The notes beneath the pieces are model-generated. The model was given only the letters and a program-made list of their open reading frames with translations, was not told the origin of the DNA and ran no database searches. The position numbers and the translations under genes are program-made. A DNA stretch of 63,796 nucleotides, counting the filler, from Octopus bimaculoides (lineage: Eukaryota), in assembly GCF_001194135.2 (NCBI RefSeq). It is 6 parts of 6 records of this genome, joined end to end, with 100 filler letters (N's around TTAATTAATTAA, not from the genome) between each part and the next. Parts side by side here need not be neighbours in the genome. Positions count along the whole stretch, not along the records: positions 44,965 to 55,416 come from NC_069007.1; 5 more parts are not named here. One strand, given 5' to 3'. Below, in pieces: positions 53,486 through 54,573 of the stretch; position 1 is the stretch's first letter, and each line of letters opens with the position of its first letter.

Positions 53486-53869
53486 AGTAATTAACACCAA
53501 ATATAACAATTAAACCATTTTTAATCTCTTCATCTAAATGGTGTCTGATCAGCGATTGTTATAAAAATGTCTTATGTCTGTTCATCCATGCAGTTATTAC
53601 AATAATTATAATTAACCACTTCTTTGGTGATTAAATATTTTTAAACATTTACATCTAAACGAGTCTGTTATTAGTTTAATCAGCAATTAACATCAGGTGC
53701 CTTATTTCTGGATGTGTACTCAATACTTACAGTGATTAATTAATCTATCTCATCAGGATTAATTAAACATTTTTTTTATATATTTGTTTTGCAAGATTTT
53801 TGATGTGAAATCGTGTGTTGAAACAGATGTTGTTGTACTTGGGGATGGTCATGTTGCCAGTTTAGCCAG

Positions 53870-53940
53870 TAAAAACACACGCACTGTATATTTGGTGTTA
53901 ATTTGCTTCAGCTTTATTTTACATTACATTACATTAATCC
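53870..53940 (-). terminator. Candidate polyadenylation signal for IL-17-like gene 2
   Basis: The minus strand reads TGTA x3, AATAAA (53918-53913), CA dinucleotides 15-25 nt downstream, then GTGCGTGTGTTTTT. This is about 660 nt past the gene 2 stop. Confidence 0.45.
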
Positions 53941-54229
53941 TATTTCGGCCAGAGTTCTTTAACAAAATTAAATTAAATACAAAAAACAATAAAAAAGTAG
54001 GTATAAACACATGAACAAATAAATAAATAAAAACAAAAATAAACGCACATGTATTAACAGAGGATATAGATAGTACAAGCACTCCCCATACACACACATG
54101 CACTTACAAAAACATAGACACACATTGAGGGATACACATGCGTAGACACATACAATAGGAATACAAAATACAAAATGGCTGATAGTTAGCAAGGAGGGAC
54201 ACACATATAAGAAAGAAGAAAGCAAAGGA

Positions 54230-54269
54230 CCACTGATGAGGTCACAGAAGTGTGATGAAAGAACTCTGG
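54230..54269 (+). ncRNA. Minimal type I hammerhead ribozyme motif
   Basis: CCA-CTGATGA-G-GTCAC(agaagt)GTGAT-GAAA-G(aa)C-TC-TGG. The CUGAUGA and GAAA cores are intact. Stem II is 5 bp, stem I is CCA/TGG, stem III is 2 bp, and the predicted cleavage triplet is CUC (after 54266). Confidence 0.5.
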
Positions 54270-54573
54270 CCGAAATAGGATTAATGTAATGTAATGTAAT
54301 ATAAAGCTGAAGCAAATTAACACCAAATATACAGTGCGTGTGTTTTTACTGGCTAAACTGGCAACATGACCATCCCCAAGTACAACAACATTTTTTTAAT
54401 ATTTACATCTAAACGAAGGCAGAATGCTTAGCAGCATTTCACCCATCCTTACGAAGCATTTTGTCCAGCATACGAAAAGTTCTGATGAAATACAATACAG
54501 TTTATTCCTTCTTTCGTTCTTTTTCTGTTTCTTTTCTTCTTTCTTCCTTCCTTTCACCAAACATTTGGATAAT

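What the first reader, a model, noticed from the sequence alone, without database searches (positions are those of the whole stretch)
53647..54416. Near-perfect 134-bp inverted repeat filling the gap between the convergent IL-17 genes
Seen: 133/134 identity between the arms, a 297-bp loop and a 16-bp flanking direct repeat; the right arm ends only about 180 nt from the gene 2 stop. Inference: a young Penelope-type insertion, or one homogenised by conversion. A 3' UTR spanning both arms from either gene would fold into a 134-bp duplex. Established: coleoid cephalopods have very extensive ADAR A-to-I editing, which acts on such duplexes. This could be a TE-derived RNA-level control element for a cytokine pair.
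Basis: partly seen in the sequence, partly recalled or inferred. Interest (0 to 1): 0.75.

Follow-up and report, generated by a model that had tools for sequence, protein, structure and literature searches.

The report
Young retroelement hairpin between octopus IL-17 genes
The near-perfect 134-bp inverted repeat is real, but it looks like a recent insertion found only in Octopus bimaculoides, probably a truncated Penelope-like retroelement, lying in the spacer between two IL-17-like genes beyond the conserved poly(A) signal, so it is an ordinary repeat-derived hairpin with no evidence that it controls the cytokines.

Summary
The arms are 53827-53960 and 54258-54391 (133/134 complementary), the loop is 297 nt, and a 16-nt exact direct repeat sits at 53647-53662 and 54401-54416. 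The two flanking ORFs are IL-17-like and convergent.

New evidence:
- The window is Octopus bimaculoides chromosome CM046627.1.
- At the orthologous convergent IL-17 pair of O. sinensis, and on a contig from a third octopod, the element is absent. Homology stops at 53340 and resumes at 54454.
- An AATAAA 68 nt after the gene 2 stop is invariant in all three species. Conservation ends about 50 nt later, before the right arm.
- On the + strand, 4 ATTAAA signals precede the left arm and 7 AATAAA/ATTAAA signals lie in the loop.
- A minimal hammerhead-ribozyme-like motif (54230-54269, +) spans the loop/right-arm junction. About 0.003 are expected by chance.
- The arm's outer end abuts the right direct repeat. 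Together these fit the published Penelope-like pattern of a 5'-truncated copy preceded by an inverted, shorter copy.

Caveats: there is no RT/endonuclease ORF, no Rfam hammerhead hit and no second copy, and 158 nt at the left end are unexplained.

Verdict: an ordinary young TE-derived hairpin. The structural guess is plausible. The regulatory claim is unsupported and disfavoured by the sequence signals.

The parts
52703..53212 (+). IL-17-like ORF, gene 1 (last or only coding exon)
   Evidence: Pfam PF06083 E 4.3e-13. 88% identical at DNA level to O. sinensis L001 18313-17677. 41% aa identity to gene 2.
53647..53662 (.). Left copy of the 16-nt exact direct repeat ATTTACATCTAAACGA (23/25 if extended to 53638). 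Candidate target-site duplication, or a very short upstream tandem copy.
53663..53820 (.). 158-nt AT-rich segment between the left direct repeat and the left arm. Origin unexplained. Weak similarity to the arm in the same orientation.
   Evidence: Local alignment score 145 vs shuffles 108 +/- 15, p about 0.02. No Rfam or Pfam hit.
53827..53960 (-). Left arm: inverted copy of the last 134 nt of the right-hand unit (140 nt at 98% if extended to 53821)
53961..54257 (+). 297-nt loop, 51% A on the + strand, with 5 AATAAA and 2 ATTAAA. Read here as the body of the longer (about 431-440 nt) 5'-truncated copy, continuous with the right arm.
54230..54269 (+). Minimal hammerhead-ribozyme-like motif: CCA CTGATGA G GTCACA-GAAG-TGTGAT GAAA GAAC TC|TGG. 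It spans the loop/right-arm junction. Predicted cleavage after 54266.
   Evidence: Only hit of an HHR descriptor in the piece; expected 0.0027 per piece, and 0 in 1500 random sequences when stem II must be at least 6 bp. The MFE of the isolated 49-mer forms helices I and II. No Rfam hammerhead hit at E <= 10.
54258..54391 (+). Right arm: 3'-terminal 134 nt of the unit
54392..54400 (+). TTTTTTAAT junction between the right arm and the right direct repeat
54401..54416 (.). Right copy of the 16-nt direct repeat
54501..54506 (-). AATAAA poly(A) signal of gene 2, 68 nt after its stop, invariant in three octopod species
   Evidence: Homology with L002 ends at 54491 and with O. sinensis at 54454.
54574..55050 (-). 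IL-17-like ORF, gene 2 (LOC106879650, XP_052833167.1; the annotated product has a further upstream exon)
   Evidence: Pfam PF06083 E 7.8e-15..

Best explanation
A recent insertion, specific to the O. bimaculoides lineage, of non-coding retroelement DNA into the spacer between two convergent IL-17-like genes. It is most likely a heavily 5'-truncated Penelope-like element (PLE) tail. On the + strand it runs about 431-440 nt (53961-54391/54400) and carries a minimal hammerhead-like motif. Upstream of it lies an inverted, even more truncated copy of its last 134 nt (53827-53960). Both copies would have been made in one target-primed reverse-transcription event, which also produced the 16-nt target-site duplication. 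The near-identity of the arms then reflects youth, not selection. Shown: the repeat itself, its absence from the orthologous spacers, the coincidence of the arm's outer end with the right direct repeat, and the HHR-like motif. Inferred: the PLE mechanism and the single-event origin. The element most likely has no host function. Canonical transcripts of both genes are predicted to end before they include both arms. Only read-through RNA would form the 134-bp duplex, and that would then be an ordinary ADAR/Dicer substrate. The confidence of 0.55 is for the full statement including the PLE assignment. The weaker claim, a young TE-derived insertion without conserved function, I put at about 0.75.
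For: (1) Lineage-specific. O. sinensis keeps the convergent IL-17 pair, but homology stops at window 53340 and resumes at 54454, and no arm, loop or 158-nt sequence occurs anywhere in 25 kb of L001. A third octopod contig diverges at 54491. (2) Young. The arms differ at 1/134, against 12-24% divergence of flanking non-coding DNA between the two species. (3) PLE-type anatomy. [quoted passage not shown] Here the outer end of the right arm is 3-9 nt from the right direct repeat, so the two copies share one 3' terminus. (4) HHR-like motif at 54230-54269 (+). [quoted passage not shown] These are features listed for PLE min-HHRs in PMC4209133. It is the only descriptor hit in the piece, with 0.0027 expected, and the MFE fold gives helices I and II. 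(5) PLEs, including recently active ones, are documented in Octopus (PMC13282606; PMC8557442). (6) Against a UTR role: the conserved AATAAA at 54501-54506 (-), and the 4 + 7 poly(A) hexamers on the + strand before the second arm. (7) Long near-perfect dsRNA-forming loci are exceptionally common in O. bimaculoides (4.4e-3 of random loci; PMC5625713).
Against: No RT or GIY-YIG ORF in the element or anywhere in the piece. Rfam hammerhead models give no match even at E <= 10 on a 121-nt window. The motif has G10.1-U11.1 instead of the highly conserved G-C, and a non-palindromic helix III insert (GAAC). I wrote the descriptor after seeing the motif, so its p-value is optimistic. The 158 nt between the left direct repeat and the left arm are far longer than the published 30-40-bp PLE 'tail'. 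No second copy of the family was found in 10 kb of the piece, about 10 kb more of L003, 25 kb of O. sinensis, a 6-frame protein-database search, or two metagenome scans. None of those searches covers the octopus genome. The inner boundary of the arm is 9 nt upstream of the predicted cleavage site, not at it.
Confidence: 0.55

Rival explanations
1. A non-autonomous DNA transposon (MITE or foldback-like) with 134-140-bp terminal inverted repeats, moved by a transposase encoded elsewhere.
For: Long, nearly identical terminal inverted repeats around a short non-coding core. TIR elements and MITEs are catalogued in Octopus (PMC13282606).
Against: No target-site duplication directly flanks the arms...GTTGAAACAG|ATGTTG... 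on the left and ...CAACAT|TTTTTTAAT... on the right. The only direct repeat is 158 nt off on one side. The termini lack Tc1/mariner (TA-CAGT), hAT, piggyBac (TTAA) or PIF signatures. The HHR-like motif would then be a coincidence (expected 0.003).
Confidence: 0.13
2. A DNA-level inverted duplication (fold-back or template switch during replication or repair) of sequence already in the spacer, unrelated to transposition.
For: A single locus and no second copy found. An exact 17-mer is shared between the flank (53489-53505) and the arm interior, which hints at local microhomology.
Against: It does not explain the 16-nt direct repeat that bounds the unit, or why the duplicated segment ends within 3-9 nt of that repeat. 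The arm sequence is absent from the O. sinensis spacer. An HHR-like motif is present.
Confidence: 0.1
3. One reading: read-through or long-UTR transcripts of one or both IL-17 genes include both arms. The 134-bp duplex is then hyper-edited by ADAR or diced into endo-siRNAs, and this modulates the cytokine pair.
For: The duplex would be very stable. On the minus strand only two poly(A) hexamers (54501, 54395) stand between the gene 2 stop and the arms, and the next AATAAA is inside the left arm at 53913. Octopus shows massive hyper-editing of repeat-derived dsRNA (PMC5625713).
Against: The element is not conserved while the gene pair is. The invariant AATAAA and the end of conservation predict a gene 2 UTR of about 85-120 nt that stops 60-90 nt short of the arm. 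On the + strand there are 11 poly(A) hexamers before the second arm. Being edited would not by itself mean regulation, since such hairpins are very numerous in this genome.
Confidence: 0.06
4. An assembly artefact: a spurious inverted join in a short-read draft assembly.
For: The assembly is a gapped draft (N runs 48556-48956 and 49874-50792). PMC8557442 notes that complex PLE structures cause problems in short-read assemblies. The chromosome-level record is the same contig sequence.
Against: The repeat lies in N-free sequence with unique flanks on both sides, a unique 297-nt loop, one internal mismatch and bounding direct repeats. Artefactual palindromes are usually perfect and sit at contig ends.
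Confidence: 0.04

Closest known systems
Penelope-like element insertions with an adjacent inverted 5'-truncated copy and min-hammerhead motifs (Craig et al. 2021, PMC8557442; Cervera & De la Pena 2014, PMC4209133)
   Same: Inverted repeat made of two copies that share one 3' terminus. Heavy 5' truncation. A flanking direct repeat of a length compatible with the variable PLE TSD. An HHR-like core with a bulged nucleotide after A9, a long helix II and a short helix I. The host genus is known to carry PLEs.
   Different: No RT/GIY-YIG ORF. No demonstrated homology to any PLE consensus. G10.1-U11.1 wobble and a non-palindromic helix III. An unexplained 158-nt segment at the left end instead of a 30-40-bp tail. 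Only one HHR copy, because the inverted copy is truncated before the core.
Inverted-repeat Alu pairs in human 3' UTRs and other repeat-derived dsRNA substrates of ADAR (general principle in PMC5625713; the IRAlu work is cited from my own knowledge)
   Same: Two inverted copies of a repeat a few hundred nt apart near a gene's 3' end. They would form a long duplex if co-transcribed.
   Different: Here both arms arose in one event, not from two independent SINE insertions. Transcription across both arms is not shown, and the poly(A) signals disfavour it.
Hairpin-RNA (hpRNA) endo-siRNA loci of Drosophila (from my own knowledge)
   Same: A long, near-perfect inverted repeat with a short loop.
   Different: hpRNA loci are independently transcribed and their targets co-evolve with them. 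Here there is no evidence of a promoter, a transcript or a target, and the arms share no similarity with the IL-17 coding sequences.
MITEs / foldback elements
   Same: A non-coding unit with long terminal inverted repeats.
   Different: No TSD flanking the arms and no diagnostic termini.

Membership tests
Penelope-like element (PLE) insertion | ORF with PLE-type reverse transcriptase and GIY-YIG endonuclease (autonomous copies) | tested here: not met
   No Pfam hit for the element's ORFs or any other ORF of the piece. A 5'-truncated fragment would be expected to lack it, so the element cannot be called autonomous, but derivation from a PLE is not excluded.
Penelope-like element (PLE) insertion | Complex tandem/inverted structure: a 5'-truncated copy with an adjacent inverted 5'-truncated copy sharing the 3' end | tested here: met
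   Arms 53827-53960 and 54258-54391. The right arm is continuous with the 297-nt body. Its outer end is 3-9 nt from the right direct repeat. Criterion from PMC8557442.
Penelope-like element (PLE) insertion | Hammerhead ribozyme motif within the repeat (canonical EN+ clades) | tested here: inconclusive
   Descriptor hit at 54230-54269, expected 0.0027, with a supporting MFE fold. However, Rfam HHR models are silent, there is a G10.1-U11.1 wobble, loop 3 is non-palindromic, and the descriptor was post hoc.
Penelope-like element (PLE) insertion | Target-site duplication of variable length; 30-40-bp tail at one end | tested here: inconclusive
   A 16-nt exact direct repeat is compatible with a TSD. 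But 158 nt separate it from the left arm, far more than the published tail.
Penelope-like element (PLE) insertion | Sequence homology to a PLE family consensus, with multiple genomic copies | not testable with these tools
   No octopus genome or repeat library can be searched by nucleotide here. Proxy searches were negative.
TIR DNA transposon / MITE | TSD of fixed length directly flanking the terminal inverted repeats, with superfamily-specific termini | tested here: not met
   The flanks of the arms share no duplication, and no TA/TTAA/8-bp TSD or known terminal motif is present.
Inverted SINE pair (two independent insertions) | Pol III A/B boxes or a tRNA/5S/7SL-like head, an A-rich or simple-repeat tail, and each copy with its own TSD | tested here: not met
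   ARAGORN finds no tRNA-like sequence and Rfam finds none. The arms have no A-tail and no individual TSDs.
ADAR/Dicer dsRNA substrate in a 3' UTR | Both arms are present in one transcript | not testable with these tools
   No RNA data are available here. Sequence signals argue against it.
ADAR/Dicer dsRNA substrate in a 3' UTR | A long, nearly perfect intramolecular duplex is possible | tested here: met
   -300 kcal/mol, z = -31.

The most novel reading that the evidence does not exclude
The hairpin is transcribed, most plausibly by read-through of gene 2 on the minus strand, where few poly(A) signals intervene. The transcript is hyper-edited or diced, giving O. bimaculoides a species-specific brake on the convergent IL-17 pair. 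Alternatively, the unit is a live non-autonomous, hammerhead-bearing PLE derivative (retrozyme-like) in a cephalopod, a group for which no such elements came up in the papers I consulted.
Probability: 0.07. Interest if true: 0.5.

Novelty: new member of a known kind. Interest (0 to 1): 0.2.

Why it matters
The biological weight is small. It is one of very many repeat-derived potential dsRNA loci in a genome already known to be exceptionally rich in them (PMC5625713). It would matter only if RNA data showed that IL-17 transcripts run through it. Its modest value is as a clean, dated example of a PLE-style inverted insertion with a hammerhead-like relic next to immune genes. It also illustrates that non-conservation and poly(A) signals argue against a 3' UTR reading of such hairpins.

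Tried and rejected
- I translated the arm and the 158-nt segment in six frames, joined the pieces into one query and searched the 5.8-billion-protein database, hoping to catch spurious ORF calls on other copies. There were no hits at E <= 10.
- Two exact-pattern scans of JGI metagenome contigs, one for the arm and one for the HHR, found nothing. This was expected, since octopus DNA is not held there.
- Exact look-ups of the window's IL-17 ORFs returned nothing. The annotated 169-aa product led to L003, which is the same assembly, so it gave no independent check and no extra copy.
- Rfam on 3.4 kb and on a 121-nt window returned only low-complexity miRNA or snoRNA noise and no hammerhead. ARAGORN found nothing.
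- A second CTGATGAG on the minus strand (53749-53756) is not followed by helix II plus GAAA, so I rejected it as a ribozyme.
- The 158-nt segment as an old tandem copy of the arm has only p about 0.02 and is left open.
- The bacterial promoter/terminator scan is irrelevant to a eukaryote.
- Individual TSDs for each arm, and MITE-type TSDs, were looked for by eye and not found.
- I did not use the third homology search or the representative-protein search, structure prediction or fold search, because nothing in the element is credibly coding.

Full report
1. WHAT IS IN THE SEQUENCE

The inverted repeat is real. The repeat finder gives arms 53821-53960 and 54258-54397, 140 nt, 98% complementary, with 297 nt between them. 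A base-by-base comparison shows that the inner 134 nt (53827-53960 / 54258-54391) differ at one position, i.e. 133/134. The arm-to-arm BLAST E-value is 8e-66. As RNA the region folds at -300 kcal/mol against -140 +/- 5 for dinucleotide shuffles, z = -31.

The 16-nt direct repeat ATTTACATCTAAACGA is exact at 53647-53662 and 54401-54416, and 23/25 when extended leftwards. The right direct repeat is 3-9 nt from the right arm. The left one is 158-164 nt from the left arm.

The neighbours are IL-17-like. ORF 52703-53212 (+) and ORF 54574-55050 (-) both pass the Pfam PF06083 threshold and are 41% identical to each other. The stop-to-stop spacer is 1361 nt, and the unit bounded by the direct repeats takes up 770 nt of it.

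2. WHERE IT COMES FROM, AND COMPARISON WITH OTHER OCTOPODS

The gene 2 product clusters with XP_052833167.1 (LOC106879650) of Octopus bimaculoides. Locus L003 (GCA_001194135.2, CM046627.1, about 3.67-3.69 Mb) is 100% identical to the window, N gaps included. That fixes the species. It also means L003 is the same underlying assembly and gives no independent confirmation.

The O. sinensis orthologue (P0002, 89% identity) sits in L001 with the same convergent IL-17 neighbour. DNA homology between the species covers window 52700-53340 (88%) and 54454-55329 (87%). Nothing lies between those blocks except microsatellite matches. The O. sinensis spacer is 2.3 kb of different repeats, and no arm, loop or 158-nt sequence occurs anywhere in its 25 kb.

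A Logan contig from a third octopod (L002, 84% protein identity) aligns from 55088 to 54491 and then diverges.

So the gene pair is conserved and the hairpin is not. The arms differ by 0.75%, whereas flanking non-coding DNA differs by 12-24% between the two species. PMC13282606 gives a split of O. vulgaris from O. bimaculoides of 13-33 Myr. If O. sinensis diverged at about the same time (my assumption), the insertion would be roughly 1 Myr old. This is an inference with wide error, and it assumes no gene conversion between the arms.

3. WHAT KIND OF ELEMENT IT IS

There is no coding capacity. The ORFs across the element and all other sizeable ORFs of the piece have no Pfam match.

There is no tRNA-like head and no Rfam family.

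There is no target-site duplication directly flanking the arms, and no terminal motif of Tc1/mariner, hAT, piggyBac or PIF. This argues against a MITE.

Neither arm has its own TSD or A-tail. This argues against two independent SINE insertions.

Three observations point towards a Penelope-like element.

(a) Craig et al. 2021 (PMC8557442) describe PLE insertions as highly 5'-truncated. [quoted passage not shown] They also list Octopus among PLE hosts. In the window the right arm is continuous with the 297-nt 'loop', and its outer end abuts the right direct repeat. The geometry is therefore a copy of about 431-440 nt plus an inverted 134-nt copy, with a shared 3' terminus.

(b) At 54230-54269 on the + strand, straddling the loop/right-arm junction, lies CCA-CUGAUGA-G-GUCACA-GAAG-UGUGAU-GAAA-GAAC-UC|UGG. 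[quoted passage not shown] Cervera and De la Pena list these as traits of PLE min-HHRs (PMC4209133). A generic descriptor finds this one site in the piece and none in L001 or L002. The expectation from Markov-shuffled sequence is 0.0027 per piece, and 0 in 1500 when helix II must be at least 6 bp. The isolated 49-mer's MFE structure forms helices I and II.

(c) PLEs with recent activity are catalogued in O. vulgaris (PMC13282606).

The weaknesses are these:
- I wrote the descriptor after seeing the motif.
- Rfam's hammerhead models do not report it.
- G10.1 pairs with U, not with the conserved C. A C-to-T change at the C11.1-G12 CpG would explain this, which is my inference.
- The helix III insert GAAC is not palindromic.
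- The inner edge of the inverted copy is 9 nt upstream of the predicted cleavage site, not at it.
- The 158 nt at the left end are unexplained. They resemble the arm only weakly (p about 0.02).
- No second family member could be found, although none of those searches covers the octopus genome.

I put 'TE-derived young insertion without conserved function' at about 0.75 and 'specifically PLE-derived' at about 0.5-0.55.

4. DOES IT ACT ON THE IL-17 TRANSCRIPTS?

Gene 2 (minus strand) has an AATAAA at 54506-54501, 68 nt after the stop. It is invariant in all three species. O. bimaculoides and O. sinensis stay alignable for about 50 nt more and then diverge, and the third species diverges right after the signal. 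This is the usual signature of a short 3' UTR of about 85-120 nt. Such a UTR would end 60-90 nt before the right arm.

Gene 1 (plus strand) meets ATTAAA at 53224, 53509, 53630 and 53762 before the left arm. It then meets five AATAAA and two ATTAAA inside the A-rich loop before the right arm.

A transcript containing both arms therefore needs read-through. This is easier on the minus strand, where only 54501 and 54395 intervene and the next AATAAA (53913) lies inside the left arm. I could consult no RNA data, so read-through is not excluded.

Even if the duplex forms and is edited, that would be the default fate of such RNA in octopus. O. bimaculoides has the highest measured density of loci able to form long, near-perfect dsRNA, and over a million hyper-editing sites, mostly in repeats (PMC5625713).

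Lineage-specificity, youth and position beyond the conserved poly(A) signal all make a selected regulatory role unlikely, at about 0.06.

5. COMPARISON WITH KNOWN SYSTEMS, AND NOVELTY

The element works like, and probably is, a truncated PLE insertion with an inverted partial copy. It resembles IRAlu-type UTR hairpins and hpRNA loci only in its potential to form dsRNA.

The expansion and tandem clustering of IL-17 genes in O. bimaculoides is already described: 31-36 genes (PMC8353272).

Nothing here is a new kind of system. It is a new, unannotated member of a known kind.

6. VERDICT

- Observation: confirmed.
- Structural interpretation: plausible, and strengthened by the hammerhead-like motif and by the absence from two related species.
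- Functional interpretation: unsupported, and disfavoured by the sequence signals.
- Interest: 0.2.

The decisive tests are a whole-genome copy survey, long-read validation with presence/absence genotyping, 3'-end, editing and small-RNA data over 53827-54391, and a self-cleavage assay of 54226-54274.

Noticed in passing
L002 about 977-1014 (+): A second, unrelated minimal hammerhead-like motif (TTTTT CTGATGA A GGA-CAAGAA-TCC GAAA TG TT|AAAGA, with a canonical G10.1-C11.1 pair). It lies about 400 nt downstream of the gene 2 orthologue in the third octopod and on the opposite strand relative to the gene. Expected 0.003 per 1.1 kb under the relaxed descriptor. This suggests that PLE/HHR relics are common in octopod intergenic DNA.
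   Followed up: partly
window 53489-53505 vs 54315-54331 (and inverted 53887-53903): An exact 17-mer, AATTAACACCAAATATA, is shared between the upstream flank and the interior of both arms. It could be chance, microhomology or an old relic of the same family.
   Followed up: no
window 53663-53820: The 158-nt segment between the left direct repeat and the left arm weakly resembles the arm in the same orientation, about 65% identity over the first 55 nt, p about 0.02. It also contains an 11-bp AT-only hairpin (ATTAATTAATC/GATTAATTAA(A)).
   Followed up: partly
window 45009-45191; L001 1-4065: A single unit in O. bimaculoides of a roughly 183-bp satellite that forms about 22 tandem copies (77-84% identical to the window unit) upstream of the orthologous gene in O. 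sinensis.
   Followed up: no
window 52355-52479 (also 45301-45418): A SINE-like repeat that is 92-95% identical to three places in O. sinensis L001 (4789-4912, 4966-5084, 19097-18992). It is more conserved than the surrounding orthologous DNA. It gives spurious ORFs such as ...PKVPCSGTEPRTMWF...
   Followed up: no
window 53279-53475: A (GAT/GAC)n-type imperfect microsatellite immediately 3' of gene 1, also present at the orthologous place in O. sinensis (L001 about 17740-17260). The start of the gene 1 ORF (MMMM) likewise comes from an ATG-repeat run at 52703.
   Followed up: no
window 47695-48147, 48556-48956, 49874-50792: A 450-bp (TGTC)n array that produces long spurious Cys/Leu/Ser-rich ORFs, and two assembly gaps (401 and 919 N) flanked by (TA)n. 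The locus is a gapped short-read draft even in the chromosome-level record.
   Followed up: no
L003 10001-12630: The annotated gene 2 product is 169 aa with a CDS range of 2.6 kb that crosses an N gap (10432-11787). The single-exon ORF in the window (153-158 aa) therefore lacks an upstream coding exon.
   Followed up: no
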